Of a stretch of 64,000 nucleotides of DNA, positions 31,569 to 54,185 are shown piece after piece. The notes beneath the pieces were generated by a model that searched no databases, was not told the origin of the DNA, and saw only the letters and a list, made by a program, of their open reading frames with translations. Each line of letters starts with the position of its first letter. The first letter of the stretch is position 1. A program made the translations under genes and the position numbers. Location: positions 186,001-250,000 of the IMG/VR virus record IMGVR_UViG_3300023174_000036; one strand, written 5' to 3'.

Positions 31569-33617
31569 TTACACTTCGCTAGATTTTGACAGTGGAATGT
31601 CGGCACCACAAGTACATGATCTCTGTGTGCAAACTATTTCTTTTTTAAAATTAACCCAATTGATTTTTTCCCACTCGGCCATGGTTCCCCAAGACCTACC
31701 ACCTACTTGACAGTTTGCCTTGCGTATGTTGCCAGTCTGATGTATGAACATACTTTCTTTACCAATAGAACAGTTCCAGTTGTAAAATCTAGTTTGTCCT
31801 TTATTGATCAACGATTGATAACTATCCGCTCCTTTTACAACAGTGCCGTCTTTGTATGTTATCATTGGGCTCATATTTAGATTTTTAACAAAATAATTAG
31901 GAGAAGCTGTTCTTGGTTCTATAGTTTTAAAGTTTTCAAAAAATTTCAGCTGTTCTGGACTGTAGTTTATTACACAAAGTTTGTTGGCCTGCTGACCATA
32001 TTGTTCCTCAATCATAACAATGTCAATTCTCACATTGGTCTGTGTTTTTACTTTTTCAATGAATTCTATACAGTTGTCCCAATATAACGGATCCATCATA
32101 ACCCTCACCGTTGTTTTAGTAAACCTGCTGGAAACTTTTAATTTTTCAATAAATGCATCACTGGTTTGATTTTTGAATTCAAATGCAGGATGAAAGCTAC
32201 ATGATGCTTGTAACAAATATTTGAAATTTTCTTCAATAAATCGTTCAGTGCGAGATAAATTGGTAGTCAGCACAGTGTGATGACCGCGATCATATATCTC
32301 TTTAATCAACTGCGTGAAAAACGGACTCATGGTTGGTTCGCCGCCTGATATTGAAAAAATAATTTTTCTATCGTTTTCTGATAGCATGTCTATGGAGTGA
32401 GATATAAAAGGCTCCACTTGTTCCCAGCTGAGAGGATAATTTTTACCGTCATGCAATTCGCTTGGACAATATCTGCACGAGTAGTTACACACATCATTAA
32501 GGATCCAGGTCACTAATGAAAATTCGTTATTTTCAATTTTGACAATCTCCGTACCTTGTATGGGCGGCAACTGTTTCCAATAGGGTTGTCTTTTTTCCTT
32601 GTCCTCATATTCCTCGTAGGCTTGACTGGACGATATGATAGAATAATCAAATATTTCAGTAAATCTTGACAAATCAACTTTTAAAGAGTATTGACGATCT
32701 GACCATAACTCTTCTTTTTGTCTGCCATCCAAGGTTCCAATGGCATAGTATCCTTCTCTATTTTTAAAAAATTCGCCGTAACTAAAACCAAATTGCTCTG
32801 GATTTAATTTCTTCCAGCGATGGTGGTATAGTTTAAATCTTTCGGGTGTATTATCCGACGGAAACATGTGTATCAATATTTCGTTTGACCATGTGGTTTG
32901 TGGGGATATTAAATTTTTCTTTAAACTTTCTAAATCTTCATCGTGTATGATATGTTTGAGACTTTTGCCCAGAGTATTGTAACCCAGGCAAAAATCCCCA
33001 AAGTCTAGAAATGGCTTTAGGCAAAATAAATCTTCATCTTCCAATTCATAATTTGTTCGAGGATTATAACTTGCCACACAAACAAATTCTGACGCTTCTG
33101 TCCAGTCTTCTTTTAATGCAACTTCTGCTGAATGTATTAGGTCGTTGAGCAGTACAAATGCATTGTGCATGTCTTCGTTGAATGTTATGCCTGGCCAACG
33201 CTTTGCATAAGCATGAGTTTCATCGTACAGTTGATAAGCAGTATCCCACCATTTTTCTTTTAATTTTTCCTGATTTCGAACACCGTATATTGCATAGTTG
33301 TCGTGTAATTCGTTCAGTATATCTTGTGTTAATATAGTTATGGGATATCTTAATTTTAAATCATAAAAAGAATTTATTCTCTTGATAATGGTATTGAATT
33401 TTTTTATAAAATCTTCATCAATTTTAAAATTTTTATGATGTACTTTTCTTTCTCGAAAGCTGTAATCACTTTTTTTAAGTTTTTTTAATTCAGCTACCCA
33501 TTTGTGTGCAAGTGGTACATCAAACAAATTAAAATAAAGATCGTAGTTTTCCAAAGTCTTGGGATCAATCAAAGTGACTCGGACTGCGTCATTTATAAAT
33601 CGATTTGCATTACTCAT
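31569..33617 (-). CDS. Fusion of an uncharacterised domain and a radical SAM enzyme (subtype B)
   Basis: C-terminal half W.L..VCNYSCRYC, SGGEPT, C...C.C..D; N-terminal half resembles ORF 52291-53181. Confidence 0.85.
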   Translation of the reverse strand: MSNANRFINDAVRVTLIDPKTLENYDLYFNLFDVPLAHKWVAELKKLKKSDYSFRERKVHHKNFKIDEDFIKKFNTIIKRINSFYDLKLRYPITILTQDILNELHDNYAIYGVRNQEKLKEKWWDTAYQLYDETHAYAKRWPGITFNEDMHNAFVLLNDLIHSAEVALKEDWTEASEFVCVASYNPRTNYELEDEDLFCLKPFLDFGDFCLGYNTLGKSLKHIIHDEDLESLKKNLISPQTTWSNEILIHMFPSDNTPERFKLYHHRWKKLNPEQFGFSYGEFFKNREGYYAIGTLDGRQKEELWSDRQYSLKVDLSRFTEIFDYSIISSSQAYEEYEDKEKRQPYWKQLPPIQGTEIVKIENNEFSLVTWILNDVCNYSCRYCPSELHDGKNYPLSWEQVEPFISHSIDMLSENDRKIIFSISGGEPTMSPFFTQLIKEIYDRGHHTVLTTNLSRTERFIEENFKYLLQASCSFHPAFEFKNQTSDAFIEKLKVSSRFTKTTVRVMMDPLYWDNCIEFIEKVKTQTNVRIDIVMIEEQYGQQANKLCVINYSPEQLKFFENFKTIEPRTASPNYFVKNLNMSPMITYKDGTVVKGADSYQSLINKGQTRFYNWNCSIGKESMFIHQTGNIRKANCQVGGRSWGTMAEWEKINWVNFKKEIVCTQRSCTCGADIPLSKSSEV

Positions 33618-34851
33618 TTGATAAATTTTCCACAGCTTGTTTTACTAGTCTCATTTCAGGAATTACATCTAGCAATTTTTCATCTCTAACAGCATCAACT
33701 TGTTCAGTTACCTTTAAGAATTTTTTGGCCGCTGACAAATCAAAGGGCTGTTTTAGCTCATGAATAGTATGTGTAAACAAATGATCAATAGTGGTATCGT
33801 ATTTTTTGTTGTGTTCCACAATGAACTTTTCTAATTTTTTAATGGTTGCTTGTCTAAAATCATCTGGCAATATATGCATGTGATAATGAGTTGGATCAAA
33901 CAAAAGATTAATAAAGAAATTTTGAAATTTATGTTTCTTACGCACAACACCAATTTCCACTAGTCTGTTGATAATTTCGGGCAATCGATTAACATTCCAT
34001 GCACCAATAGTTAATCCTGGTCTAACAACAATGTTGTCCAGTTTGACCATCTCTTTCAAGTTGTCTTCTACCTTGCTCCACACAGTGCCTGACCTTATGA
34101 TCTCAGCACGTTCGTCGATTTCGTCAATACTGGGCCATACTTCAACTTTCCAATCGTCCCACAATCTCCAATAGTCCAGCACATTCTTTTTGCCGTACAT
34201 CAACGTACTTGCATTGGTATTGTAACTGACTTTGACATCGAATCTCTTATGCTCCACTAGCATATCTAAGATTTGCCAATGCTCGGGCATCAACAGTGGC
34301 TCACCGCCCGCAAAGTAAATTTTTTGTACATGTTCTACTTGATCTTTTAAGAAATCAAAATTGGTAGATGTGCCAACTTGGTCAATACTCCAAACTTTTT
34401 CTTGATCAGAATAACCAAGTTTTTTAGCATCAGGAACCCATGCGCTACTATATCGTGGGCCGCAACTGCGACATTTCATATTGCACAAATTGCTAAAACG
34501 AAAGTCCCAGTATTTTAACTCCATAGTTTTACATGTGCCATCAGGTTCTGTAATTTCTGGAATAATCTTAATTACATCAGGAAAATCTTTATTGTGATAA
34601 AATCTTCCACTTTCTCCGGTGACTTTTTCTCGGTCAAAACATTTGTTGCAAATTTTAGGCTCTACTCCGTTGATCATATCTTTGCGGAGATCTTTCATAT
34701 TTTGACTATTCCAAACCTGATCAATAGTTTGCGTATTTAGGTCGCCCGCAAAATAATTATGCACCGAAGTTAAACAACACGGCACAACTTGTCCACTAGG
34801 TTCGAATGCCAAATGCATCCACGGCACTGCACATAGGGTATCTTTACTCAT
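33610..34851 (-). CDS. Radical SAM enzyme with N-terminal twitch-like Cys domain (subtype A)
   Basis: CAVPWMH...CC...CNKC, then CNMKCRSC and FAGGEP; TAAATA at 34883-34888 supports the MSKDTL start. Confidence 0.9.
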   Translation of the reverse strand: MSKDTLCAVPWMHLAFEPSGQVVPCCLTSVHNYFAGDLNTQTIDQVWNSQNMKDLRKDMINGVEPKICNKCFDREKVTGESGRFYHNKDFPDVIKIIPEITEPDGTCKTMELKYWDFRFSNLCNMKCRSCGPRYSSAWVPDAKKLGYSDQEKVWSIDQVGTSTNFDFLKDQVEHVQKIYFAGGEPLLMPEHWQILDMLVEHKRFDVKVSYNTNASTLMYGKKNVLDYWRLWDDWKVEVWPSIDEIDERAEIIRSGTVWSKVEDNLKEMVKLDNIVVRPGLTIGAWNVNRLPEIINRLVEIGVVRKKHKFQNFFINLLFDPTHYHMHILPDDFRQATIKKLEKFIVEHNKKYDTTIDHLFTHTIHELKQPFDLSAAKKFLKVTEQVDAVRDEKLLDVIPEMRLVKQAVENLSNE

Positions 34852-34922
34852 TTTATTTTTTCTCTTATGTATAAATCGTTTGTATTTACGATAATACTTT
34901 TCTAAAACCGGCCGTATTGAAA

Positions 34923-35762
34923 TCATGTCCAAAGACTGTCTCGGGCCTTAATAAGACGAATCATCATTTCGGTATCTTCTTTTTCGTAAGCCGCTTCAAT
35001 CTTTTGCAGTAGCTTGTGTGCTTTATCGCTGGCCTTTTTAAGTGTAGGATCTTTTTCCTGTCCCCAATTTAACTTGCCACCATTGGCGATACGACTTGCT
35101 TCGCAGACCGCAGTCCACCCACTGGCTTCATATGGATCGGGTCGGTTGCGATAAGTCACTGTCCACCAAGTGTACAGCTCTTTGATTTCTTTAGCACGAA
35201 TTGCTTGTCCGGTAGGTTTGCCGTAGTCGGGATGATCTGGTTCACACCAGTCAGTGTTAGTCAAAGTCATTGCCCAATCAAGATGATCGAGTCCTGCTTG
35301 TGGGCAACGCCAAGTTCTCCAACGCCACCAACCACTGGCCCAGAAAGGAGGATTGTATTTGGCACGATCTTCTTTGCTTCCCCAAGCGATGTGACTCCAT
35401 GCAGACTCTACTTCAACAAAATCCACAAGTTCGTTAAAAAGACATGGGAGAAACCGATTGCCAACATCGCACCAATTACCAGGGGTAATATCACGAGGGT
35501 GAGCAGTGAGTGAGTGGGTTCGAGTAACGAATCGATTATTGATATAATACTTTGCATCATAAATTTTCCTTACAGGCCATGTGACAAAATCTTGAACGTG
35601 TCCAAGTGCTTCTTCGGCTAGCCAATAACGGAAGTTGTGTTTCATTTGAGCCCGAGTGGTCCACTCGTCCCATTCTTCTGCTGTTCCTGCACTCAATTTC
35701 TTAGTGCCGCGAAGCCAGTCTGCAAAAGGTGTGCATGACCAATAGTGTGTATGATGTGCCAT
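34923..35762 (-). CDS. Trp-rich hypothetical protein
   Basis: 279-aa ORF with overlapping start/stop junctions. Confidence 0.7.
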   Translation of the reverse strand: MAHHTHYWSCTPFADWLRGTKKLSAGTAEEWDEWTTRAQMKHNFRYWLAEEALGHVQDFVTWPVRKIYDAKYYINNRFVTRTHSLTAHPRDITPGNWCDVGNRFLPCLFNELVDFVEVESAWSHIAWGSKEDRAKYNPPFWASGWWRWRTWRCPQAGLDHLDWAMTLTNTDWCEPDHPDYGKPTGQAIRAKEIKELYTWWTVTYRNRPDPYEASGWTAVCEASRIANGGKLNWGQEKDPTLKKASDKAHKLLQKIEAAYEKEDTEMMIRLIKARDSLWT

Positions 35763-36199
35763 TAAATCTTCTCGTAAGTTTGTGCAAATATATCTTTTTT
35801 GACTACCCCGTAGTCGTTCTCACCATGTCGAACAATAACATCTTCGCCTGGATTATAGTGTAACTTCTCACCCCATGATGTGTCAACTGATCCGGAACGA
35901 TCCGCCAACTTGGCCCATTTGACGATCTTTTTTGGTGTACAAACACCATCTCCCAAATCGTCTTTAAGATCGTCAAACCGTTCTGGACTGATAGGATATT
36001 GTTCTCCTTTGGGCCCGGTCATAATATAAAAACCTTTAGGATACTTGACTGGTCCTTCCAGTGTATCAATAGTGCCAGGTTTATCTGCAATCTCATAACG
36101 TTCTTTGGCAGGACGTTTGTAGGCTTTGAATCCACCGTCCTTGAACCAGTCGTCAGTGATATGCATACCTTCTACAATATTGATGTATTCACGAATCAT
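35762..36199 (-). CDS. PGDYG-like two-repeat protein
   Basis: Two repeats: TLEG...G.YI..GPKGEQYP and TSWG...GEDV.V......DIFAQTYE. Confidence 0.55.
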   Translation of the reverse strand: MIREYINIVEGMHITDDWFKDGGFKAYKRPAKERYEIADKPGTIDTLEGPVKYPKGFYIMTGPKGEQYPISPERFDDLKDDLGDGVCTPKKIVKWAKLADRSGSVDTSWGEKLHYNPGEDVIVRHGENDYGVVKKDIFAQTYEKI

Positions 36200-36891
36200 T
36201 TTCTATCTCCAAACAACTGTAACAAGTTGATAAACAAGTTAATAAAGTCCATGTACAGAGTCAGTGCTCCACGAATTTCTGCACTGTCACTAGTCTCTAC
36301 ACTTAGCTCTTCTCGAATTTGTTGTGTATCATAAGCAGTAAGTCCTAAAAAGATAATAATGGCTAGTGCAGAAATCACCATCTGCATCACAGTACTACCA
36401 ATAAAGATATTGACGATGCTGGCAATAACAATTGCAATTAAACCAACAAACATAAACTTACCAAGACTATCTAGACTCCGTTTGGTAAAATAACCATAGC
36501 CACTCATTACTGCAAACAAGATTGCCGCACCCATAAATGCACTAACAATAGATCCCATGGTAAACACTGCAAAAATTGTGGCAAAGCTCAGACCCATTAA
36601 TGCCGCAAAACCATGTAAACATAACTGCGCCACGCCCTTGCTAGGATTGTTACCTAACACAAAGCTAATACCAAAGATTGCGGCAAGTGGTGATAATATC
36701 ACAATCCATTTTATCCAGCCTGTAAAAAAGAATTCCAGCAACTCTGGACTAGTGCCAACAAAGTAGCTGACCATCATAGAAACAATAACAGCGAGACTCA
36801 TATGTCCGTACACACGGCCCATGGCTGAATTGATTTCAGCGGCGGATCTATAATTTAAAATTCCGCCATTTGTATAATTTGCACCAAACAT
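36196..36891 (-). CDS. Bax inhibitor-1/YccA family membrane protein
   Basis: About 7 TM helices; LTAYDTQ and ALTLYMDFINLF motifs. Confidence 0.9.
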   Translation of the reverse strand: MFGANYTNGGILNYRSAAEINSAMGRVYGHMSLAVIVSMMVSYFVGTSPELLEFFFTGWIKWIVILSPLAAIFGISFVLGNNPSKGVAQLCLHGFAALMGLSFATIFAVFTMGSIVSAFMGAAILFAVMSGYGYFTKRSLDSLGKFMFVGLIAIVIASIVNIFIGSTVMQMVISALAIIIFLGLTAYDTQQIREELSVETSDSAEIRGALTLYMDFINLFINLLQLFGDRK

Positions 36892-36902
36892 TTTTTTCTC
36901 CT

Positions 36903-37268
36903 TTAAATAAATGGTTTGAGATTGGGCGTCACCCAGCCCACAGGTTTTAACACTTTTCCATCTTCACGCTTGCGAACCTTGCCCGTGTCGTGATCAACTT
37001 TGGCAAAGTTTGTCTTCATAACTTCTTTCCATGCACCTTCTGCATCCGACCCCATGCTATGGATAGCACCGATAGTGACAACCAAAATATCAATCAATGC
37101 GTCAAGTGTTTCCAATTGATCATTGTTGTCCACTGCAACTCTAAGTTCTTTGTATTCTTCATCAATAAGGCCAAGATACATTTTAAATTGTTCTTGGTCA
37201 AATTCACCTCCTGCGGTTTGATCGCAGGCCTTCATAAATTTTTCTTGATCTCTAAATGGGTTTGTCAT
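36903..37268 (-). CDS. MazG-like/PRA-PH NTP pyrophosphohydrolase
   Basis: EEYKEL...DALID...N..K...REDGKVLKP. Confidence 0.8.
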   Translation of the reverse strand: MTNPFRDQEKFMKACDQTAGGEFDQEQFKMYLGLIDEEYKELRVAVDNNDQLETLDALIDILVVTIGAIHSMGSDAEGAWKEVMKTNFAKVDHDTGKVRKREDGKVLKPVGWVTPNLKPFI

Positions 37269-37468
37269 TATGCCATCCTATCTACGTTTTGTCCTGCACG
37301 GTTCATCCGTCGGTTCATTTCAATTCTTGCTTCTTCGTTGGCTTTGAGATTTGCTTTTACACGTCTCTCTTCCAAACGCAGTTCTTCGTGCCGCTTGTCC
37401 AATTTTTTAATTTCTGTCTGACGATACATTTCTGCATTTTGTGCAGATACTCTACTGATTTCTGTCAT
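37268..37468 (-). CDS. Small coiled-coil protein
   Basis: 66 aa, coupled to the ligase stop; ends GQNVDRMA. Confidence 0.6.
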   Translation of the reverse strand: MTEISRVSAQNAEMYRQTEIKKLDKRHEELRLEERRVKANLKANEEARIEMNRRMNRAGQNVDRMA

Positions 37469-38790
37469 AGTTTTTCTCCTACTTCAAAGCCCCTGAACCG
37501 TAAGAACCTTGGAAAGCGCAAACTGTATGTGCCGTCTTGGTTCCTTGTAACGGCATCTGCTCGCACTTCCACGATCTGGCCAAGTAAGGAATCACGTGAA
37601 CTCCAATAACTATCGCGATCACTATCGCTAAAACCACTACCAACGTTGACTCGAATAGTTTTTCCGTCATCGACTCCTTGGCATACAATTGCTCCAAGGC
37701 GTCCAATATTTCTTCCTGTTCCTTCTTCGACATCTATCACCTCCAAAGACACTTCAATAAAAGGCTTCAATTTGAGCCATGCCACACTGCGTTTACATTC
37801 ATAAGGCGCCGCAGGATCTTTAATCATAATGCCTTCGTACCCGCCAGCCACTGCCTTTTGATTAATTTCTTTAAAACGTACTTGACCATCTGCTGTGTCC
37901 AAATCAACAAGTTCATGACCAACAACTGTGACATTGGGCAACATATCTTTATATGTTTTGTGCCAGTGGTAAATCATGTCACTACGAGTGGACTGATCTT
38001 TATCCCAGAATCCTTTTTCAAAATCTGCTAACGGTATTACGTCAAACAAGTTAAGCACAGCATCACCTGCTTCAACATTGTCCTTGCGGTGTACTTGTTT
38101 CATCAAGTCTTGAAAACTGGACGACATGATCTCACCGTCTAGCACAACATCTATATTTTGGTCAGTACCATGTGTTTTGACCACTGCACTAAGTTGTTCT
38201 ACAATGTGTGGAAAATTAGCAAGTTCTTTACCATTACGACTGAACATGTCCACCCGACCATCACTGCGTACAATAGTAAGTACTCTAACTCCGTCGAGTT
38301 TAACTTCGATAAGTTTTTTGCCTGATACCTTCGACTCATGATTAGCACTATCATGAGCAAGCTGACAACCGAATACAGGAATAGCATAGTCAGCATACTT
38401 CTTTTCCACTACTTTGTTAATTGTTTTTTCGCTTACACCACAGCGCAGGTCTTTGATCAAAATACGACGATACCAGCCATTCCATTCTTTTTGAGTAGCT
38501 GACTTCATCATTGCTTGAATCATGTCACGTGCTGTATTGCCTGTGACGTTGCGAGTAACGAAACCAGTAAGAGCGAGAGTAAAACTACTCCAAGGTAAGC
38601 CAGGCCCATCTTCATCTTTTTTCTCCGGAATTTGTTTGAGTCCAAAAGTAATCATAGGATCAAGAGCAAGGCGACACCCTTCAAAAAATTCATCACATTT
38701 TTCTTGTGCAATGACTTCGATAATGCCTTCTTTATCTAAACGTGAATTATGGGTTTCTAAATTCCAAATATGACTGGCACAAACGCTCAT
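37465..38790 (-). CDS. lig: ATP-dependent DNA ligase
   Basis: KLDGVR, DGE, EGIMIK, WLKLK motifs and OB-fold SLRFPRF. Confidence 0.95.
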   Translation of the reverse strand: MSVCASHIWNLETHNSRLDKEGIIEVIAQEKCDEFFEGCRLALDPMITFGLKQIPEKKDEDGPGLPWSSFTLALTGFVTRNVTGNTARDMIQAMMKSATQKEWNGWYRRILIKDLRCGVSEKTINKVVEKKYADYAIPVFGCQLAHDSANHESKVSGKKLIEVKLDGVRVLTIVRSDGRVDMFSRNGKELANFPHIVEQLSAVVKTHGTDQNIDVVLDGEIMSSSFQDLMKQVHRKDNVEAGDAVLNLFDVIPLADFEKGFWDKDQSTRSDMIYHWHKTYKDMLPNVTVVGHELVDLDTADGQVRFKEINQKAVAGGYEGIMIKDPAAPYECKRSVAWLKLKPFIEVSLEVIDVEEGTGRNIGRLGAIVCQGVDDGKTIRVNVGSGFSDSDRDSYWSSRDSLLGQIVEVRADAVTRNQDGTYSLRFPRFLRFRGFEVGEKL

Positions 38791-38822
38791 TTTGACTCCG
38801 ATGATTAACTGTATAAGTTTAT

Positions 38823-38851
38823 ATTATACAGAGTAATTATCAGTATGTCAA
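38823..38851 (-). promoter_or_regulatory. Consensus sigma70 promoter for the ligase operon
   Basis: TTGACA-N17-TATAAT. Confidence 0.85.
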
Positions 38852-39565: not shown

Positions 39566-39566
39566 T

Positions 39567-39623: not shown

Positions 39624-40214
39624 TTATGGGCGTTTTCTAATGATTTCGTCAATCAAACCGTAGTCTAGAGCTTCTTGCGCACTCATAAATTTATCACGTT
39701 CCATATCGTGTCTAAATTGTTCGTAGGTCTTGCCCTTGCTATTATGATCCACATAAATCTGTGTCAAATTCTTCTTCATTTTAAGAATCTCTTCAACTTG
39801 GATTTCCATGTCTGTTGCTTGCCCACCTGCACCACCCGAGGGTTGGTGAATCATGTGTCTAGCACTTGGTAGCATCTTACGCTTGCCAGGAGCACCAGCA
39901 GTAGCAAGCAGACTTCCCATACTACAGGCTTGGCCCATAACGATGGTACTAACGTCAGGCTTAATGAATTGCATAGTATCGTAAATAGCCATACCAGCTG
40001 TGACTACACCGCCTGGACTGTTGATAAAAAATGTAATGTCTTCATTACCTTGACTCTCCAAAAACAAGAGTTGAGCTACCAGCAAACTAGCACTGTGCTC
40101 GTTTACATCTGTATCCAGCATAACAATACGATCTTTGAGAAGACGACTGTAAATGTCATAACTGCGTTCACCACGAGCTTCTTGCTCAATAACCATTGGT
40201 ACCAAATTAGGCAT
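39624..40214 (-). CDS. clpP: ATP-dependent Clp protease proteolytic subunit
   Basis: [27 protein letters not shown] and MERD motifs. Confidence 0.97.
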
Positions 40215-47271: not shown

Positions 47272-47304
47272 TTCGCTCTCTGTGTGTGAGTTAATATACT
47301 TTGT

Positions 47305-47333
47305 ATTTTACAGGAAAACAGCATCTGTGTCAA
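47305..47333 (-). promoter_or_regulatory. sigma70 promoter
   Basis: TTGACA-N17-TAAAAT. Confidence 0.7.
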
Positions 47334-47976
47334 TCTTTTGTAATCGCACATAGACCTTTTTGGTTAAACGTTTGATTACAGGATTGGTTAAATCCCCAAA
47401 CTGTCCAAAATAAGAAGCCAAACACGGACTAACGAATTTGCCATTAAACTTTAATTTGGCTAGAGAAGATACCCTATGCATATATCGTAATGCACGATAT
47501 TTTCCTAAAGCACGACATAGTTCAACGGCTATGCTAAATGCATAAGCATCAATTTCGTCGTCTTCTTCCAAATAGTCTTTGTAGGGTTTTTTAACGTAGT
47601 CTGAATAGATTACATATTTTCGTTTTACGCTTTGTCGTTGGTGTTTGAATTCATGTATAGTGGCGTCAAAAATTTGAATTAAGAATTCTGTAGTTTGTGT
47701 AGTATCCCAAATAACTGTATTATCAAAATTATGATGCACAACTACTTCTATAGGTGTTTCGTTATTTTGATCTTCTTCGGCATCATAATATGCGTTAACA
47801 TAAAATTCTTCGGGCCCTAGTACTTTATCTCTAGTGGATTTAATTTTTAAATTAAATTTTGCCAACCTAAATTCTCTACGAAGAGATACTACTAGATTTT
47901 GGAAACTGGAACCGAGTTTACTTTTGCGTCTAACTTGATTGCAAACAGCACTGACAGTTTCCATTACGGCATTCAT
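47308..47976 (-). CDS. HExxH zinc-metalloprotease-like protein
   Basis: IHEFKHQRQ...YL...DEIDAYA. Confidence 0.6.
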   Translation of the reverse strand: MNAVMETVSAVCNQVRRKSKLGSSFQNLVVSLRREFRLAKFNLKIKSTRDKVLGPEEFYVNAYYDAEEDQNNETPIEVVVHHNFDNTVIWDTTQTTEFLIQIFDATIHEFKHQRQSVKRKYVIYSDYVKKPYKDYLEEDDEIDAYAFSIAVELCRALGKYRALRYMHRVSSLAKLKFNGKFVSPCLASYFGQFGDLTNPVIKRLTKKVYVRLQKIDTDAVFL

Positions 47977-47977
47977 T

Positions 47978-48196
47978 TTATAACCTATATGTTACACGAC
48001 CTTTTGATAAATCATAAGTGCTTACTTCCACTCGGACTTTATCGCCTAAAATAATTTTAATTTTGTGTTGTTTTAATCTGCCACCTAGATAAGCCAATAT
48101 GATGTGTTGATTATCGTCCAACTGTACTCTGTACATGTTACCAGGCAATACTTCAGTAACCTGTCCAGTTAATTCAAGTAGGTCGTCTTTGCTCAT
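47978..48196 (-). CDS. infA: Translation initiation factor IF-1
   Basis: 72 aa; G.V.EVLP...GD.V.VE.S.YDL.KGR.TYR. Confidence 0.95.
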   Translation of the reverse strand: MSKDDLLELTGQVTEVLPGNMYRVQLDDNQHIILAYLGGRLKQHKIKIILGDKVRVEVSTYDLSKGRVTYRL

Positions 48197-48363
48197 GCTT
48201 TGCTAATGATCATTTTTCCATCTTCCACCTGAATATTCAGCGTAGTACCTTCAACCCATCCTTGTGCTTCGCAAATCTCCGGTGGAATTTTCATCATGAC
48301 ATTATCCGGGTCTCCAGGAATATCTTCAAAAATTTCTTCTGCTAAAAATGTTAGTTTTTCCAT
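48193..48363 (-). CDS. AbrB/MazE-like small DNA-binding protein (not in ORF track)
   Basis: MEKLTF...MKIPPEICEAQGWVEGTTLNIQVEDGKMIISKA; TAAATA-N5-ATG. Confidence 0.65.
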   Translation of the reverse strand: MEKLTFLAEEIFEDIPGDPDNVMMKIPPEICEAQGWVEGTTLNIQVEDGKMIISKA

Positions 48364-48376
48364 AATAGTATTTACT

Positions 48377-48931
48377 TTATAGTTCTTCGTCTTTATAAGG
48401 AACTGGTCTCCATCCCAATCGATTTAAATCTAATTCAATTTCTTCAGTTACTTGACCTTCTGGAACATAGGTACGACCATCAGAGACATCCGGCACAGTT
48501 CCATCTAAACCATTGCCTAATTCTGGATTGCCAATACCGCTACAATACCAATCGATGTAGTCACCTTGCTCTCGCATGTCAGCAACAATACCGCCAGCAT
48601 GGCGCCAACTGCACGACCAGGTTTCACCTTTTAGTTCTTGCCAAAACTCTCTGCTTTGCCAATCCATGTTGCACATGGCCGCATACAAGTTTTGAGCATA
48701 ATTTTCACTGGCTTTGACTTTGTCGCACAGTTCTTTTGAACTACGGAGATCATACTCCATATTGTTCTTCTGCCACTTTGGATCTTCAAGATTGGCCACG
48801 TCTTGTTCTCGCCAAGATTTGTACATTTCTAAATATGCAGGATTGGGTAATTTGCCTTCTTCTTCACAGTGTTTGACATACCCTTCCTTTTGGAACGTAT
48901 GTCGCTCAGGACTTGATGCTATTTTTTTCAT
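48377..48931 (-). CDS. Hypothetical protein
   Basis: YAQNLYAAMCN...SWR.AG...A...GDYIDWYCSG. Confidence 0.7.
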   Translation of the reverse strand: MKKIASSPERHTFQKEGYVKHCEEEGKLPNPAYLEMYKSWREQDVANLEDPKWQKNNMEYDLRSSKELCDKVKASENYAQNLYAAMCNMDWQSREFWQELKGETWSCSWRHAGGIVADMREQGDYIDWYCSGIGNPELGNGLDGTVPDVSDGRTYVPEGQVTEEIELDLNRLGWRPVPYKDEEL

Positions 48932-49260
48932 TTGTGGAAATTGCCTTGGAAACAATGCCGGACTTCGTGACCTAAAGTATCGTGGTCAGTTGTTTTTGCA
49001 GTAATCACAGTACACATGTTAGACTTGTTTGGGGCAGGGTTAGACCAAAAAGAGCAACCGTCCATTTTTTGACCACTGCCTAACCTAGCGAACCCACCGT
49101 TGCCCCGATTTTTACTTTCAGTGTCGCAAGCTTCAAATACATTATCAACTTGTATCCACTTGATGGTACTAGTTGTAACAACATTAGAACTTGTTGAAAA
49201 CTGTTCGCCGGCTTGAACTGTTCCCACAAACATTAAAAATACTGCCAGTGCCTTTTTCAT
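48928..49260 (-). CDS. Secreted HExxH-containing small protein
   Basis: Signal peptide; LGHEVRHCF. Confidence 0.65.
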   Translation of the reverse strand: MKKALAVFLMFVGTVQAGEQFSTSSNVVTTSTIKWIQVDNVFEACDTESKNRGNGGFARLGSGQKMDGCSFWSNPAPNKSNMCTVITAKTTDHDTLGHEVRHCFQGNFHK

Positions 49261-49287
49261 TCTTGCCTCTTTCTGTGTGTGTTAAAA

Positions 49288-49398
49288 TGGTGTAGACGGT
49301 AGGATTCGAACCTACAAAGTCGCTCTAAGAGCTAGACCCTGACCCTCCGTTCGCCGAAGCTACTAGGAGGAGGTATACCAAGTTCCACTCACGTCTAC
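49288..49398 (-). tRNA. Atypical 111-nt tRNA-like RNA (Leu-like body, no canonical anticodon loop)
   Basis: Acceptor GTAGACG/CGTCTAC-A-CCA; T arm GTAGG-TTCGAAT-CCTAC; D loop GGAACTTGGTATAC; the anticodon position holds a 17-nt insert with a cUUCGg hairpin; long extra arm. Confidence 0.75.
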
Positions 49399-49404
49399 AG
49401 TTGT

Positions 49405-49433
49405 ATTATATACTTATTTGTAAATACTGTCAA
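49405..49433 (-). promoter_or_regulatory. Consensus sigma70 promoter for the tRNA-like RNA, overlapping a divergent TAAATA late promoter (49421-49426, +)
   Basis: TTGACA-N17-TATAAT on the minus strand; TAAATA-N6-ATG on the plus strand. Confidence 0.85.
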
Positions 49434-50404
49434 TGAGCTTTTCAACCATTCCTTTCCAAAATATTGTACGGTTTGGGCAACGCACAATGCTAGCCAAACC
49501 ATTGTTTTCTACCAGTTGGATTTTGGGTAGATTCTGTAACTATAATTGTAGTTACTGTTGGCCCTATGCTCGCAGTGACCGAATAGATCACCAACCACTT
49601 GAAGTGTATAAAGCCACGGTGGACGAGATTAAGCGTCAAGCACGAGCTAATGGATTCAACCAGTTTCATTGGTCGTTCAGTGGAGGTGAGCCTACTGCTT
49701 ACAAACAGTTGCTAGATCTAGTTAAACATTTGGATGAATTAGAATCCAAGTATCAAAGTATTCATATGACCACTAATTTGTCGCCTGGATCAAAATGGTG
49801 GAACACTTGGTGTCGGAATACTGAGATGTTACAACGTAGAAGTATCACTGCCAGTTTTCACGATGAGTTTGCTTGCGAACAAGAATTTGGCGACAAGTGT
49901 TTACAGTTGCAATACGAACTGGTACACGTTACAATCAATCAAGTAATGGTGCCCGAAAAATTTTACGAATTATATGATCGCATGGAGCGTTTTCATTCTC
50001 GCGGCATCAACGTTACATTGAAGCCTCAAAGCGATCCCACAGCGAGTGCGGTTGTTGACGGTTATACCAAAGATATGATGCATAAAATGCAAACAGGTTT
50101 CCCGCAACGTGCTAATGGTGAGGATGCTTATCAAATAGCATTATACGATGCTGACAACACCGAATACTTGTTTGACCAAGCAGAAAGATTTAATGCATTT
50201 GGATTTAACAAATTCACCAACTGGACTTGTAATGCCGGCTATCAAAGTGTTATAATAAGAGGTAATGAGGTTAAAAGAAGTTACAGTTGTCATGATGTGC
50301 CGTTAGGCACACTTGACAGCTTTGAATTATTCAAAGAACCCAAACGCTGTACTACTCCCAGTTGTGTTAGTAGTGCAGACTCAAAGATACCAAAATGCAA
50401 ATAA
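49433..50404 (+). CDS. Radical SAM enzyme (subtype B)
   Basis: W.LGRFCNYNCSYC, SGGEPT, C-terminal Cys cluster. Confidence 0.9.
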   Translation: MSFSTIPFQNIVRFGQRTMLAKPLFSTSWILGRFCNYNCSYCWPYARSDRIDHQPLEVYKATVDEIKRQARANGFNQFHWSFSGGEPTAYKQLLDLVKHLDELESKYQSIHMTTNLSPGSKWWNTWCRNTEMLQRRSITASFHDEFACEQEFGDKCLQLQYELVHVTINQVMVPEKFYELYDRMERFHSRGINVTLKPQSDPTASAVVDGYTKDMMHKMQTGFPQRANGEDAYQIALYDADNTEYLFDQAERFNAFGFNKFTNWTCNAGYQSVIIRGNEVKRSYSCHDVPLGTLDSFELFKEPKRCTTPSCVSSADSKIPKCK

Positions 50405-51687
50405 CCTTTAGAGACTACGTAAAAACATTTCCCAAACTTGAAAAAGAGTTTGATAATGCCGCTATGTGTGCTATGAAGTGGATCTATCTGTATGTGCATT
50501 TAGGTGAAGGAGTTGTTAAAGGATGCCATAATGTTCCTCACAGATATGTTACTAGTGATGACATTGCCAAGTACGGTAAGGACTTATTTACTAACAGCGA
50601 ATATGAAATTAATACACGCCGAGAAAAATTAAACAACATAAAAAATCCAGAATGTCAAAGGTGTTGGAGTAGCGAATCAAAAAATGTTCGTAGTTGTAGA
50701 TTACCAGAACCTTACTATAAAATGCATAGGGATCGTTTTCCAGAAATCACCAATGATTTAACCCCTATGCCAACTATGATAGAAATTGCATTTAATAATA
50801 CCTGTGATTTAAAATGTATATATTGCAGTAGCACTTTTAGTTCTCAGTGGCAAACTGAAGATAAAAAATTTAACATTGTATCTAAACAACAAGCCGTTGC
50901 CCCAGAAGGATTTGAAGATATATTTTGGCAATGGTTAGAACAAGACGGTTCAAATACCCTACTACAATATTATATTTTGGGAGGCGAGCCCTTAATACAA
51001 CCGGAGTTCTATAATTTCATAGACAGGTTTATCCCTTTAATAAAAGCTAATCCAAATAAATTCAACGTTAAACCTGAATTAGTTATTCTTACCAATGGCA
51101 ATACACCTGAAAAATATTTAACTAAGTGGTTTGAAAAAATAAAAGAATTAAATGAAGTAGTGTCTATTCAATTTCATATCAGCATTGAAGGATACGGAAA
51201 CAAAGCAGAGTACATCAGAACTAATTTAGACTGGGATAGATTTTCCAGCAACGTGGATAAAATATTAGAATTTTCTAAATCAGGTGCAAGTGAAATTAGA
51301 TTCAGCATTACACATTCAGCTATGAGTATTACTAGTTGTTTAGACTTACTACAGTGGATAAAAAAATTATCGGATAAACACAGCATTGATGTAGATTTAA
51401 TTCGAACTAGTGTTGTTACTCCAGAACATCTTGCGCCTTGCATGTTAACTCCTAATTTTAATACCTACATAGATGAAGTGTGTTCATGGATAGAAACTGA
51501 TGCTCCCAAATGGAATCACTACATTGATTTTTTAAAAGGCATTGGTAATAGTTTTGGAAAACACTCTGTTGCCGATTTAAAAAAATTTACTGCATGGGAG
51601 CAAGATATGGTAAGCCGAAGAAATTTTAAAACTAAAGAAACATTCCCTGAGTTAGCTACATGGCTAGAGTATTGCAATGAAAATTGA
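50395..51687 (+). CDS. Radical SAM enzyme (subtype A)
   Basis: N-terminal C..KW...C...CQRC; CDLKCIYC; GGEP. Confidence 0.9.
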   Translation: MQITFRDYVKTFPKLEKEFDNAAMCAMKWIYLYVHLGEGVVKGCHNVPHRYVTSDDIAKYGKDLFTNSEYEINTRREKLNNIKNPECQRCWSSESKNVRSCRLPEPYYKMHRDRFPEITNDLTPMPTMIEIAFNNTCDLKCIYCSSTFSSQWQTEDKKFNIVSKQQAVAPEGFEDIFWQWLEQDGSNTLLQYYILGGEPLIQPEFYNFIDRFIPLIKANPNKFNVKPELVILTNGNTPEKYLTKWFEKIKELNEVVSIQFHISIEGYGNKAEYIRTNLDWDRFSSNVDKILEFSKSGASEIRFSITHSAMSITSCLDLLQWIKKLSDKHSIDVDLIRTSVVTPEHLAPCMLTPNFNTYIDEVCSWIETDAPKWNHYIDFLKGIGNSFGKHSVADLKKFTAWEQDMVSRRNFKTKETFPELATWLEYCNEN

Positions 51688-52291
51688 TACCGAACACTTA
51701 CACTATTGGATGCAGGCTATTAGGCAAAGCCCAGACCCTATGCGGACTATGGATGCTTTTTGGTCAGGACAAATTAAAAGTAAAGAGTGGCTGATCAATT
51801 CGTTAGAGTTAGTTGTACATCCTCAAGTTGATTGTAAATTGCCCAAGCCTTTTTCTATAGACATTCACGGTGGGTGGGTTGGTGTTCTTGCTAGCATGAT
51901 ATTTCAAAGTAGGATACCGGTTGCTAATATTCGAAGTATTGATATAGACCCTACTTGTGAATCCATTGCCACAATGATGAACAAGGGTGAAGAAATAAAT
52001 GGCAAGTTCCGTGCAGTAACTTCAGACATGTGTGCTATACGAAGCGATGCAGATATTGTTATCAATACCAGTTGCGAACATATTACACAAGATCAGTATG
52101 ACTTGTGGAAAAGTGGAATGCCTCATAATAGTATACTTGTCTTACAAAGCAATAATTATAATATTCCCGAACATGTTCGCATTGCCAATAGTTTAGAAGA
52201 ATTTAAACAACAATGTGATATCAATGTACTATGGTCTGGAGAACTAGAATTACCTTTATACAAACGATGGATGATTATAGGAAAAGTATAA
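51677..52291 (+). CDS. Class I SAM-dependent methyltransferase-like protein
   Basis: GGWVG.LA, SIDIDP and INTSCEH motifs. Confidence 0.7.
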   Translation: MKIDTEHLHYWMQAIRQSPDPMRTMDAFWSGQIKSKEWLINSLELVVHPQVDCKLPKPFSIDIHGGWVGVLASMIFQSRIPVANIRSIDIDPTCESIATMMNKGEEINGKFRAVTSDMCAIRSDADIVINTSCEHITQDQYDLWKSGMPHNSILVLQSNNYNIPEHVRIANSLEEFKQQCDINVLWSGELELPLYKRWMIIGKV

Positions 52292-53181
52292 TGGAGTATG
52301 AAATTTACAACAACAAACCTGGAATTGAAATTGTATTTTCTAACGGCTTTGAAAATATTAGTTTGTTTTATGCAATTTATGATTGGCCAGCTGCCACTAA
52401 GTTTTACAAGTTGTTAACCGATGCTATCAATAATAAAAATTCATTTATAAGTGATACTAGTTTCAATGTATCTGAACACGATGAAGTTGTACTATTAAAC
52501 ACCATAAACGATACAGTTGATAAAATAAACAAAAAATACAAAATCAATATTCCTGTAATTACATCAGACTCAGATTTAAATTTATTGCATAGAGCAACTG
52601 TTCCTGTTAATTGTGAGTTGTGGAAAATTATTAATGACAGTATACATTCTTATGAACAATATAAGATTCAAATTAATAGTGAGCCACGTGTTAACGCATA
52701 TTTTAGATTTGAGCCTAGAAATTTAATCCCATTAAATAAAGAAGATTTTTTATTTTTTAAAGCTGACAGAGAGTTTGGCGACTTATGCATGAACTATACC
52801 CATAAGGGAAAACATTGGTTAGAATTACAATCCGATAACGATCCTGATAGTCTAACTGATGGTCAATTGCAAGCAGAAACACATTTAGAAGCAGGAGGCT
52901 ACTTGGTATTTAGACCCCCAAGTCCGAATCCTTTTTATCGTTTAAATAAATTTATACAATGGTTTAATAATGCATGTCCGGGAAAATCCGTAACATCCGA
53001 GATGGCCGTTGGATATTTGTTACTGGGTAAGATGGTGATGCCACAATCTTGGAATGGCTTCTACGTTCCGGAAAGATCTGATTGGGTTAGAAGGTTGTGC
53101 AATTATAAAACCATTATAGGTATAAATTTAATTACAATCAACGATGTACCGTCGTTATTAAAAAAATCTAAGATAATATGA
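52291..53181 (+). CDS. Uncharacterised radical-SAM partner protein
   Basis: Similar to the N-terminal half of 31569-33617; start MEYEIY overlaps the upstream TAA. Confidence 0.7.
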   Translation: MEYEIYNNKPGIEIVFSNGFENISLFYAIYDWPAATKFYKLLTDAINNKNSFISDTSFNVSEHDEVVLLNTINDTVDKINKKYKINIPVITSDSDLNLLHRATVPVNCELWKIINDSIHSYEQYKIQINSEPRVNAYFRFEPRNLIPLNKEDFLFFKADREFGDLCMNYTHKGKHWLELQSDNDPDSLTDGQLQAETHLEAGGYLVFRPPSPNPFYRLNKFIQWFNNACPGKSVTSEMAVGYLLLGKMVMPQSWNGFYVPERSDWVRRLCNYKTIIGINLITINDVPSLLKKSKII

Positions 53182-54185
53182 AACCAATTGCTATTGTTAA
53201 TTTTAATCATAACGACTATTTGTATATCACATGGTCGTTAACTTCTACTTGTAATTACGAATGCAATTATTGCTGGCCAAATGCTCACGATGGAAAACAT
53301 AGATTTCCTATAAATTTAGATTTAATTTGTAAGAATATAGAACATTTGATATCAACTTACAAAACTCACTTTAATAAAACAAATGTAAGATTGTCCTTAG
53401 CAGGCGGCGAGCCAACGTTGTGGCCCGAATTAGGAGAGTTCGTTAAACGCATACACGAATCTACCGGTTGTCGTGTTACACTTAATACTAACGGTTCACG
53501 AACTATACGGTGGTGGAAAGAGTATGCCAAATATTTTGACGATATACAGATTAGCGTACATCGAGAACAATGCGATGTTGCTCATGTTATAGAATTATTA
53601 GATTTGATATACAAAGAAACAGATGCGTTCTGTGCAGGCCGAGTATTGATGGATCCACTAGCGTGGGACGTTAGTATAGGTATGTTAAATCAATTAGTCA
53701 ATCATCCAACTCCTTGGCTTGTTAAAACTGTATTACTCACTGATCCGTTAACTGGTGAAGTAATGACAAATTATCAAAATGAACATTTTGATTTTATGAG
53801 AGACACTGTTAAAAAACGCCCGTCCGACGAATATGTAATGCGCATGAAAAATGCTGGTAAGATAGATGAGACTGATAAAAAAGAAGCAAAGGTAATATTT
53901 TCAAATGGTAACGAAGAACCTTATGATTCTTTCCGCTTAATGGAAAATGGTTGGAATAAATTTTATGGATGGGATTGCAATGTAGGTCTTGATCGTTTGG
54001 GAATTAATTATGCAGGCGAAGTAGAAGGCAACTGCGGCGAAAAGATTTTTAATACAAGTTTAAATATAAACGATCCTAATTTTATTTCTAAATTCAAACC
54101 CGAGTTAGTTGCTCCTATTAAATGTAAGAAGATATGGTGTGATTGTACATCTGATATAAGAATTACAAAACAGAAAAATGTATAA
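53178..54185 (+). CDS. Radical SAM enzyme (subtype B)
   Basis: W.LTSTCNYECNYC, GGEPT, C...C.C..D. Confidence 0.9.
   Translation: MKPIAIVNFNHNDYLYITWSLTSTCNYECNYCWPNAHDGKHRFPINLDLICKNIEHLISTYKTHFNKTNVRLSLAGGEPTLWPELGEFVKRIHESTGCRVTLNTNGSRTIRWWKEYAKYFDDIQISVHREQCDVAHVIELLDLIYKETDAFCAGRVLMDPLAWDVSIGMLNQLVNHPTPWLVKTVLLTDPLTGEVMTNYQNEHFDFMRDTVKKRPSDEYVMRMKNAGKIDETDKKEAKVIFSNGNEEPYDSFRLMENGWNKFYGWDCNVGLDRLGINYAGEVEGNCGEKIFNTSLNINDPNFISKFKPELVAPIKCKKIWCDCTSDIRITKQKNV

What the first reader, a model, noticed from the sequence alone, without database searches (positions are those of the whole stretch)
31569..54185. Rosetta-stone evidence for an unnamed radical-SAM partner domain
Seen: the N-terminal half of the 682-aa protein (LYFNLFDVPLAHKW; LNELH; LNDLIHSAE; FGDFCLGYNTLGKSL) aligns by eye with the stand-alone ORF 52291-53181 (LFYAIYDWPAATKF; LNLLH; INDSIHSYE; FGDLCMNYTHKGKHW). 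In one island the domain is fused to a subtype-B radical SAM. In the other it is the translationally coupled gene directly upstream of a subtype-B radical SAM. The conserved N..H and N..IH..E helices suggest a helical metal site. Inference: an obligatory partner (oxidase, substrate-binding or electron-transfer domain) of subtype B.
Basis: partly seen in the sequence, partly recalled or inferred. Interest (0 to 1): 0.65.

Follow-up and report, generated by a model that had tools for sequence, protein, structure and literature searches.

The report
Unnamed phage partner domain of radical enzymes
A roughly 300-residue protein domain with no name in any database, found so far only in viruses of bacteria, is repeatedly fused to or encoded beside iron-dependent radical enzymes in the tail-fibre region of large freshwater phages, which marks it as a dedicated helper of an unstudied phage modification pathway.

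Summary
The N-half of the 682-aa protein (31569-33617, minus strand) and the stand-alone gene (52291-53181) are homologous: BLASTP E 9e-7, and profile-profile 99.3% probability, E 8e-21, over 273 columns. The gene boundary in island 2 falls on the linker of the fused protein.

The domain has no Pfam, NCBIfam or PHROG family and no sequence relative in the PDB. A profile search finds 896 clusters, from metagenomic or viral sources where a source is recorded. None was found in 185,579 prokaryote genomes.

The AlphaFold model (pLDDT 87) is a cyclophilin-like beta-barrel with a helical insert. The insert carries near-invariant Asn/His and Asn/His/Glu.

Of 65 stand-alone copies, 61 sit next to one of these enzymes: subtype B 28, dioxygenase 31, N-Twitch 31.

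The best reading is a shared substrate- or metal-binding partner in tail-fibre-linked tailoring cassettes. Its biochemical role and its substrate remain inferred.

The parts
32598..33617 (-). Copy 1 of the unnamed domain (DOM): residues 1 to about 340 of the 682-aa fused protein
   Evidence: hhalign against the stand-alone family: probability 99.3%, E 8e-21. Matches the family HMM at E 1e-65. No Pfam, NCBIfam or PHROG hit on this half.
31569..32597 (-). B-type radical SAM half of the fused protein (residues about 341-682 plus the stop), with CxxxCxxC and five further invariant Cys near the C-terminus
   Evidence: PF04055 at 36 bits, above its cut-off. BLASTP against P0003 E 2e-32. Invariant C377/C381/C384 and C616/C636/C663/C668/C670 in 34 homologues. 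Foldseek of the full model hits MoaA, BlsE, SkfB and viperin.
52291..53181 (+). Copy 2 of DOM: stand-alone 296-aa gene, translationally coupled on both sides
   Evidence: AF2 model pLDDT 87, pTM 0.82. 14 of 17 differences in a natural variant fall on third codon positions (positions listed; codon phase worked out by hand from start 52291).
53178..54185 (+). B-type radical SAM enzyme (335 aa) directly downstream of the stand-alone DOM
   Evidence: PF04055 at 54 bits. ATGA overlap with the DOM gene. Orthologues sit next to DOM in either order in loci L004-L013 and L021.
33610..34932 (-). N-Twitch radical SAM (440 aa) directly upstream of the fused gene, in the commonest upstream position for DOM genes
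   Evidence: NF033640 at 351 bits. The upstream neighbour is an N-Twitch radical SAM in 34 of 74 DOM clusters.
34923..35762 (-). Trp/Arg-rich 279-aa protein of unknown function (u279), a recurrent cassette member upstream of the N-Twitch gene
   Evidence: Recurs in related loci. 71% mean column identity among 6 homologues. No PDB, Pfam or PHROG hit.
29244..31609 (-). Rest of island 1 downstream of the fused gene: unknown 435-aa protein (u435) and a radical SAM/SPASM enzyme (351 aa)
49433..52291 (+). Island 2 upstream of the stand-alone DOM: B-clade radical SAM (323 aa), N-Twitch radical SAM (430 aa), and a 204-aa protein with weak class-I methyltransferase-like motifs
   Evidence: Gene order is conserved in loci L004-L023.
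54178..60100 (+). Island 2 downstream: radical SAM/SPASM (323 aa), N-Twitch radical SAM (436 aa), unknown proteins, Asp_Arg_Hydrox dioxygenase (57728-58540), a 218-aa protein (58533-59189) with one short BLASTP match to the dioxygenase (21 aa, E 5.5e-4), and a B-clade radical SAM (59186-60100)

Best explanation
The two regions are copies of one unnamed domain of about 300 residues, found so far only in viruses. Its predicted fold is a cyclophilin-like beta-barrel with a three-helix insert. The insert carries near-invariant Asn97/His100 and Asn115/His119/Glu122. A barrel loop adds Tyr169/Gly173/Lys174 and Asp184 (numbering of P0002:21-316). The domain is a fixed component of phage cassettes that combine several radical SAM enzymes with AspH- or JmjC-type Fe(II)/2-oxoglutarate dioxygenases. 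These cassettes lie in the tail-fibre (host-recognition) part of large phage genomes. I propose that it is a shared partner subunit. It binds the common substrate, possibly with a metal ion at the His/His/Glu site, and docks onto whichever C-H-activating enzyme is fused or encoded next to it: a B-type (Twitch-like) radical SAM, an N-Twitch radical SAM, or a dioxygenase. This is what a RiPP recognition element does for peptide maturases, though the fold here is different. Shown: homology, fold class, fusions, gene neighbourhood, conservation, restriction to viral sequences. Inferred: physical docking, metal binding, and the nature of the substrate. A virion or tail-fibre protein or peptide is favoured over a glycan or small molecule.
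For: Homology of the two copies. The family is large and unnamed: 896 clusters at E<=1e-3 and 499 at E<=1e-10, with no Pfam, NCBIfam, PHROG or PDB sequence match. Fold: nearly all of the top 30 VIA hits are cyclophilin-fold proteins, Z 7-8.2 with about 135-150 residues aligned across model residues 8-284. The ESM Atlas shape search gives Cyclophil_like2 and Pro_isomerase clusters. Four fusion architectures with three enzyme classes: DOM+rSAM_B, DOM+N-Twitch rSAM, DOM+AspH and AspH+DOM. Neighbourhood: 61 of 65 stand-alone copies (clusters at 90% identity) directly adjoin a radical SAM or AspH gene on the same strand, and 33 of 37 at 60% clustering. The order DOM-B is swapped to B-DOM in some lineages while adjacency is kept. 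The full-length fused model has pTM 0.79, which fits a fixed arrangement of the two domains. A distant homologue in the cultured Agrobacterium jumbo phage Atu_ph07 (Foldseek E 1.3e-10; hhalign 91%, E 1e-6) lies 4 nt upstream of a radical SAM gene. That gene is in a cassette of four radical SAM genes plus a JmjC-type cupin, about 4 kb (eight genes) from a 4450-aa structural protein. In this window the cassettes adjoin tail-fibre genes. A published pelagimyophage study places radical SAM cassettes in the host-recognition cluster (PMC7029224). AspH, JmjC_2, and SPASM/Twitch radical SAM families mostly act on protein or peptide substrates (established knowledge of those families), and cyclophilin folds bind peptides.
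Against: Near-invariant His/His/Glu, two Asn, Lys, Asp and Tyr across sequences of 17% mean identity look more like a catalytic or metal site than a passive docking surface. No binding was shown: the complex prediction of P0002 with P0003 gave no verdict. No precursor peptide or conserved substrate gene was identified. Some cassette neighbours hint at sugar or small-molecule chemistry: a cytidylyltransferase-cupin fusion, GT25, carbamoyltransferase and APS kinase. The cyclophilin-fold match is only moderate (Z about 8; Foldseek against the PDB found nothing at E<=1e-3). The neighbourhood sample came from motif-seeded scans of viral contigs and is biased towards a few subfamilies.
Confidence: 0.45

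Rival explanations
1. DOM is an enzyme in its own right. A mononuclear or dinuclear metal enzyme built on the His/His/Glu helices would catalyse a separate step of the same pathway, such as hydrolysis, oxidation or group transfer. Fusion and adjacency would then reflect pathway coupling rather than substrate presentation.
For: Near-invariant N97, H100, N115, H119, E122, Y169, K174 and D184 in 126 diverse sequences. Broader subfamilies carry LNxLH-EEFE and LNExIHxxE, that is HxxxE plus HxxE on two helices. Pathway enzymes are commonly fused to their neighbours. Pictet-Spenglerases (McbB, KslB) appear among the cyclophilin-like fold hits, which shows this scaffold can be catalytic.
Against: Fusion to three mechanistically different enzymes, in both orders, is more typical of a recruitment module. 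The Atu_ph07 homologue keeps its place next to a radical SAM gene although most signature residues appear altered in the single-sequence alignment. The second Glu is missing in the window's stand-alone subfamily. No match to any known metalloenzyme family.
Confidence: 0.3
2. DOM is an iron-delivery, activation or protection factor for its partners. All partner classes (radical SAM, AspH, JmjC) are iron enzymes, and a His/His/Glu site could hand over Fe(II) or stabilise or repair the metal centres.
For: Iron is the only cofactor common to all fused and adjacent enzymes. The phage also carries an A-type Fe-S carrier and an Fe/Mn superoxide dismutase about 9-10 kb from island 1.
Against: There is no precedent for a metallochaperone fused one-to-one to such enzymes. 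No conserved Cys for Fe-S handling. Only 2 DOM copies serve 10 radical SAM genes in the window, and the rSAM304 and rSAM323a clades never neighbour DOM. That argues for specificity towards a reaction rather than a general cofactor service.
Confidence: 0.1
3. The resemblance is chance or compositional, and the stand-alone ORF is not a real gene.
For: Pairwise identity is only 29% over 111 residues, in an AT-rich genome.
Against: Profile-profile E 8e-21 over the whole domain. 41 and 43 homologues in independent metagenomes. 14 of 17 natural differences lie at third codon positions (positions; codon phase worked out by hand). A contig from an RNA library covers the gene. The AF2 model is confident.
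Confidence: 0.01

Closest known systems
Cyclophilin-like fold proteins (PPIase PF00160; Cyclophil_like PF04126 / TM1367; Cyclophil_like2 PF18050; DUF3830 / 3kop)
   Same: Predicted eight-stranded beta-barrel core. Top structural matches in the PDB (Z 7-8.2, 120-150 residues aligned) and in the ESM Atlas. Cyclophil_like2 is itself often fused to redox (flavodoxin) domains.
   Different: No sequence match to any of these families. About twice their size. A helical insert of about 70 residues (model residues 60-130) carries the conserved His/His/Glu, and this insert is absent from cyclophilins. PPIase catalytic residues were not assessed.
RiPP recognition element (PqqD-like RRE) of radical SAM and other peptide maturases
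   Same: A small module found either stand-alone or fused to several mechanistically different tailoring enzymes, encoded beside them, and thought to present the substrate.
   Different: Different fold: the RRE is a winged helix-turn-helix. DOM has a conserved polar or metal-type site. No precursor peptide was seen. The resemblance is one of logic only and was not tested biochemically.
Collagen prolyl 3-hydroxylase complex P3H1/CRTAP/cyclophilin B (PDB 8k0f)
   Same: A cyclophilin-fold subunit working with an Fe(II)/2OG dioxygenase on a fibrous protein. 8k0f chain C is among the fold matches (Z 7.6).
   Different: There cyclophilin B is a true PPIase. No homology beyond the fold. The phage substrate is unknown.
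Radical SAM cassettes in the host-recognition cluster of pelagimyophages (Zaragoza-Solas et al. 2020, PMC7029224)
   Same: Variable radical SAM gene cassettes, AspH genes and glycosyltransferases embedded among tail-fibre genes of aquatic myophages. The window has the same layout.
   Different: That paper notes the cassettes only in passing. It does not describe this domain or its fusions. tblastn with three family members found no match in 50,697 cultured-phage records. The host of this 356-kb freshwater phage is unknown.
Twitch-type radical SAM enzymes (MoaA, BlsE, SkfB, viperin), for the partner enzyme
   Same: The B-type half has CxxxCxxC, a partial TIM barrel and conserved C-terminal Cys. 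Its best Foldseek hits are MoaA, BlsE and SkfB.
   Different: All NCBIfam hits are far below their cut-offs, for example viperin_w_prok 43-66 bits against a cut-off of 180. The reaction is therefore unknown.

Membership tests
Rosetta-stone (fused versus split) pair | The N-domain of the fused protein is homologous to the stand-alone protein, over the whole domain | tested here: met
   hhalign 99.3%, E 8e-21, 273 columns. BLASTP E 9e-7.
Rosetta-stone (fused versus split) pair | The C-domain of the fused protein is homologous to the gene adjacent to the stand-alone protein, and the split point maps to the linker | tested here: met
   BLASTP E 2e-32. P0003 residue 6 aligns to fused residue 358. 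DOM ends at about residue 330.
Rosetta-stone (fused versus split) pair | Physical interaction of the split proteins | tested here: inconclusive
   The complex prediction gave no verdict (score 0.00, controls not run). The fused model's pTM of 0.79 is only suggestive.
Cyclophilin-like fold superfamily | Closed eight-stranded beta-barrel fold | tested here: met
   VIA-align Z 7-8.2 to more than 20 cyclophilin-fold chains spanning model residues 8-284. Atlas TM 0.60 by target to Cyclophil_like2. Support is moderate: Foldseek against the PDB gave nothing at E<=1e-3.
Cyclophilin-like fold superfamily | Sequence membership in PF00160, PF04126 or PF18050 | tested here: not met
   No Pfam hit at E<=1. 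No PDB sequence hit with the family profile.
Cyclophilin PPIase | Conserved PPIase catalytic residues in the barrel face | not tested
RiPP recognition element (PqqD-like) | Winged helix-turn-helix fold, or a PqqD family match | tested here: not met
   The model is a beta-barrel plus helical insert. No PqqD hit. This is a functional analogy only.
Radical SAM superfamily (the C-half of the fused protein and P0003) | CxxxCxxC motif and PF04055 above its gathering score | tested here: met
   36.1 and 54 bits against a cut-off of 29.5. C377/C381/C384 are invariant.
SPASM/Twitch radical SAM subfamily (B-type partner) | C-terminal Cys-rich auxiliary-cluster domain | tested here: inconclusive
   Five invariant C-terminal Cys, including CxxxxCxC, and fold hits to the Twitch enzymes MoaA, BlsE and SkfB. 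However, there is no PF13186 match on the B-type proteins.
Hemerythrin/HHE or ferritin-like di-iron helical sites | Four-helix bundle with HxxxE / ExxH ligand sets, and a family match | tested here: not met
   No such Pfam or PDB hit. Only three helices, with one His on one helix and His/Glu on another in the window's copies.

The most novel reading that the evidence does not exclude
DOM is the recognition or metal-binding subunit of a previously undescribed phage system that post-translationally modifies tail-fibre or other virion proteins. The modifications would be radical C-H functionalisation and hydroxylation, carried out by interchangeable radical SAM and Fe(II)/2OG enzymes. The system would diversify or harden host-recognition structures. 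DOM would define a new class of substrate-presenting module, analogous to the RRE but built on a cyclophilin-like barrel.
Probability: 0.25. Interest if true: 0.85.

Novelty: new variant of a known kind. Interest (0 to 1): 0.62.

Why it matters
Radical SAM cassettes are a recurrent and unexplained feature of the hypervariable host-recognition regions of abundant aquatic phages. This domain is the one non-enzymatic-looking component that stays attached, by fusion or adjacency, while the catalytic partner changes between oxygen-independent radical SAM enzymes and oxygen-dependent dioxygenases. That makes it the natural handle for finding the substrate by pull-down or co-crystal, and so for learning what these cassettes do. 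It also defines a sizeable protein family (about 900 clusters at 50% identity) that could be named and modelled in Pfam, NCBIfam and PHROGs. A distant member in the cultured Agrobacterium phage Atu_ph07 gives an experimentally tractable entry point.

Tried and rejected
- Pfam, NCBIfam and PHROG scans of both DOM copies found no family.
- A family-profile search of PDB sequences found nothing significant.
- Foldseek of the stand-alone model against the PDB found nothing at E<=1e-3.
- The ESM Atlas feature search gave no usable hit.
- tblastn of P0001, P0102 and P0097 against 50,697 cultured-phage records found no match.
- Motif-seeded scans of 185,579 prokaryote genomes with two subfamily alignments found no relatives. 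This is pattern-based, so it is not proof of absence.
- The complex prediction of P0003 with the stand-alone DOM gave no verdict, neither support nor evidence against.
- Profiles A5 and A7 did not find the Atu_ph07 homologue by HMM search of that genome. It was located through the BFVD hit's length and its position beside a radical SAM gene, and then confirmed by hhalign.
- The second Atu_ph07 protein of about 296 aa is not a family member.
- No further DOM copy exists in the 356-kb genome, so the unknown 250-aa ORF upstream of the AspH gene is not a diverged copy.
- Profiles of the cassette unknowns u204, u435 and u279 against the PDB and Pfam gave only weak methyltransferase-like hints for u204.
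- My first neighbourhood table mislabelled stand-alone DOMs as rSAM_B, because the HMM had been built from fused proteins. I rebuilt the HMM without them.
- I considered and rejected an electron-transfer role, since no Cys or flavin/heme motif is conserved, and chance similarity.


Full report
**Setting.** The window is bases 186001-250000 of a 356-kb IMG/VR virus record estimated 96% complete. Its left part encodes giant tail-fibre-like and virion proteins (3290 aa and 1515 aa), a GT25 glycosyltransferase, an A-type Fe-S carrier, an Fe/Mn superoxide dismutase, UvdE and a PTPS/QueD-like protein. An ATP-dependent DNA ligase, a metallophosphoesterase and ClpP are also present. Two islands hold ten radical SAM genes in all: 29244-35762 on the minus strand and 49433-63888 mostly on the plus strand. 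These are all the radical SAM cassette genes of the genome, and two more AspH genes lie just past the window's right end. By BLASTP nine of the radical SAM proteins fall into three groups. The 'B' group holds the fused C-half, the 335-aa enzyme, a 304-aa enzyme and, more distantly, a 323-aa enzyme. The N-Twitch group (NF033640) holds the 440-, 430- and 436-aa enzymes. The SPASM group holds the 351- and 323-aa enzymes. The tenth, at 62848-63888, scores as N-Twitch with my own HMM.

**Checking the observation.**
Its ATG overlaps the upstream stop (TAATG), it follows an AGGA, and the homologues start at that Met.
- Its stop overlaps the radical SAM start (ATGA).
- BLASTP of the N-half of P0001 against P0002 gives E 9e-7.
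- I collected 41 homologues of the stand-alone protein (about 297 aa) and 43 of the fused architecture (about 685 aa), all from metagenomes or viral contigs, and aligned each set.
- hhalign of the two alignments gives probability 99.3% and E 8e-21 over 273 columns.
- The radical SAM halves align at E 2e-32. P0003 begins where the linker of the fused protein ends.

**The genes are real.** The stretch occurs in freshwater-lake metagenomes from at least eight studies. A contig from a metatranscriptomic library covers 52233-53449 at 100% identity, spanning the stand-alone gene and the junction into the radical SAM gene. DNA carry-over in that library cannot be excluded. In a diverged population, 14 of 17 differences within the gene fall at third codon positions; the positions come and I worked out the codon phase by hand from start 52291.

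**What the domain is.**
- Neither copy matches Pfam, NCBIfam or PHROGs. A family profile finds nothing in PDB sequences.
- A profile of both subfamilies, searched against 1.84 billion representative proteins, finds 896 clusters at E<=1e-3 and 499 at E<=1e-10. Most are stand-alone proteins of 280-350 aa.
- Across 126 of these, at 17% mean column identity, the nearly invariant positions are N97, H100, N115, H119, E122, G163, Y169, G173, K174, D184 and G241. Broader subfamilies read LNxLH-EEFE-YG and LNExIHxxE.
- AlphaFold2 gives a confident model of the stand-alone protein (pLDDT 87, pTM 0.82). Foldseek against the PDB finds nothing significant.
- An exhaustive structural alignment puts cyclophilin-fold proteins in almost all of the top 30 places, at Z 7-8.2 with 120-150 residues aligned across model residues 8-284. 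Generic helical hairpins match residues 60-130.
- The ESM Atlas shape search independently returns Cyclophil_like2 and Pro_isomerase clusters.
- I read this as a cyclophilin-like barrel with a helical insert of about 70 residues. The Asn/His and Asn/His/Glu motifs lie in predicted helices 96-102 and 109-127, and by helix periodicity each set points to one face. A metal site there is plausible but untested.

**Distribution.** Motif-seeded scans find 118 relatives for each of two broader subfamilies in IMG/VR, and none in 185,579 prokaryote genomes. tblastn with three members finds none in 50,697 cultured-phage records. BFVD does hold ten structural relatives (E<=1e-7), all uncharacterised. One of them is from the cultured Agrobacterium jumbo phage Atu_ph07.

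**Testing the interpretation.**
- Fusions. Besides DOM+B (the 43-member family plus P0087, P0089 and P0094), the top 150 representatives include DOM+N-Twitch radical SAM (P0182), DOM+Asp_Arg_Hydrox (P0159, P0166) and the reverse order AspH+DOM (P0143). Several others carry unknown N-terminal extensions.
- Neighbourhoods. Of 74 clusters with both neighbours present, 5 are fused to B, 3 are fused to AspH, and 65 are stand-alone.
- Of the 65 stand-alone clusters, 28 adjoin a B enzyme on the same strand, 31 an AspH-type dioxygenase and 31 an N-Twitch radical SAM. In all, 61 adjoin at least one of these.
- The usual order is N-Twitch, then DOM, then B or AspH, then AspH. At 60% clustering, 33 of 37 stand-alone clusters adjoin one of these enzymes. 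An independent look-up with precomputed Pfam shows the same pattern: DOM overlapping the start of an Asp_Arg_Hydrox gene, in a locus with radical SAM genes.
- The close family of the window's stand-alone copy. Eleven of 20 loci have the B orthologue adjacent, 6 as DOM-B and 5 as B-DOM. Eight have no B orthologue in the fetched locus, and one locus ends at the DOM gene.
- The B tree. Fused enzymes form one clade inside a large clade of B enzymes that neighbour DOM. The clade of the 335-aa enzyme also neighbours DOM. The clades of the 304- and 323-aa enzymes never do.
- Conclusion. The functional link is strong and specific to certain enzyme lineages. The domain is a cassette component shared among three classes of C-H-activating iron enzymes, not a B-specific subunit.

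**Cultured example.** In Atu_ph07 the BFVD hit matches AUZ94948.1 by its 300-aa length and its position beside a radical SAM gene. hhalign against the family profile gives 91% probability and E 1e-6 over 244 columns. The gene lies 4 nt upstream of a radical SAM gene. It sits in a cassette of four radical SAM genes and a JmjC/cupin protein, about 4 kb (eight genes) from a 4450-aa 'T4-like structural protein'. This repeats the window's logic in a distant phage. In that single-sequence alignment most of the signature residues appear changed.

**Mechanism.** The most economical reading of a module that is stand-alone or fused, in either order, to three different catalytic domains is a shared substrate- or cofactor-binding partner. 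This is the logic of the RiPP recognition element, though the fold is different.
- Favouring a protein or peptide substrate: the partner families (AspH, JmjC_2, SPASM/Twitch radical SAM) mostly act on proteins or peptides, the cyclophilin scaffold binds peptides, and the cassettes lie among tail-fibre genes. The last point was noted in passing for pelagimyophage host-recognition clusters (PMC7029224).
- Against a passive adaptor: the conserved His/His/Glu, Asn, Lys, Asp and Tyr set would suit a metal-dependent enzyme.
- Favouring sugar or small-molecule chemistry: some neighbours (cytidylyltransferase-cupin, GT25, carbamoyltransferase, APS kinase).
- The full-length fused model has pTM 0.79, which fits a fixed arrangement of the two domains. 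The complex prediction for the split pair gave no verdict and counts for nothing either way.
- I give the shared-partner model 0.45, an independent metalloenzyme 0.30, an iron-delivery or activation factor 0.10, and chance similarity 0.01. The rest is unassigned.

**Novelty.** The domain family is unnamed and uncharacterised, and no paper in the searched library links a cyclophilin-like domain with radical SAM enzymes. The concept of an accessory module of tailoring enzymes is known, so I rate it a new variant of a known kind. There is a 0.25 chance that it marks a genuinely new phage virion-modification system.

**Limits.**
- Model coordinates could not be inspected, so the geometry of the putative site and of the interdomain interface is untested.
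They were validated only against Pfam spot checks.

Noticed in passing
window 19565-23057 (minus strand): About 9-10 kb from island 1 the phage encodes an A-type Fe-S carrier (PF01521), an Fe/Mn superoxide dismutase, a UvdE UV endonuclease and a PTPS/QueD-like protein. The first two could support or protect its ten Fe-S radical SAM enzymes.
   Followed up: no
window 29244-63888, and G000:C1 249933-252160: All ten radical SAM genes of the 356-kb genome cluster in this window. Three AspH-type genes accompany them, two of which lie just beyond the right end of the window.
   Followed up: partly
window 34923-35762 (minus strand); homologues L175, L139, L085, L054, L127: The Trp/Arg-rich 279-aa protein upstream of the N-Twitch gene is unusually conserved: 48-81% identity to the window's copy and 71% mean column identity among 6 homologues. 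The neighbouring enzymes are only 30-60% identical. It has no relative in the PDB, Pfam or PHROGs. It could be a substrate or a structural partner.
   Followed up: partly
window 51677-52291 (plus strand): The 204-aa protein translationally coupled to the stand-alone domain has GGWYG...DIDP...NTSCEH motifs and scattered weak methyltransferase hits among its homologues (Methyltransf_2 at 7e-4 in one member). It is probably a class-I methyltransferase fold, but this is not established.
   Followed up: partly
window 27128-27898 (minus strand): A fusion of a cytidylyltransferase-like domain with a mannose-6-phosphate-isomerase-type cupin lies at the distal end of island 1. This hints at nucleotide-sugar chemistry in the same operon.
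   Followed up: no
window 9686-19558 and 5139-9686 (minus strand): Giant ORFs of 3290 aa and 1515 aa match tail-fibre and virion-structural PHROGs. With the 403-aa tail-fibre-like protein at 23133-24344, they place the radical SAM islands inside a host-recognition-type module.
   Followed up: partly
L200 (MF403008.1 110000-130000), Agrobacterium phage Atu_ph07: The cultured 490-kb jumbo phage has an unannotated cassette in which every gene is labelled 'hypothetical'. It holds four radical SAM genes, a JmjC/cupin protein and a distant DOM homologue, about 4 kb from a 4450-aa structural protein.
   Followed up: partly
L036 (ENA scaffold), genes at 3199-4956: One DOM locus carries a carbamoyltransferase (Carbam_trans_N) and an APS kinase just upstream of DOM-AspH, as well as a second DOM copy. 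This suggests carbamoylation or sulfation steps in some cassettes.
   Followed up: no
window 39624-40214 and 35762-36199 (minus strand): A ClpP protease (PF00574, E 3e-77) and a PGDYG-family protein lie between the two islands.
   Followed up: no
window 52233-53449: A 1217-nt contig from a 2015 freshwater metatranscriptomic library matches at 100% across the DOM gene and into the radical SAM gene. This fits co-transcription, but DNA carry-over is not excluded.
   Followed up: partly
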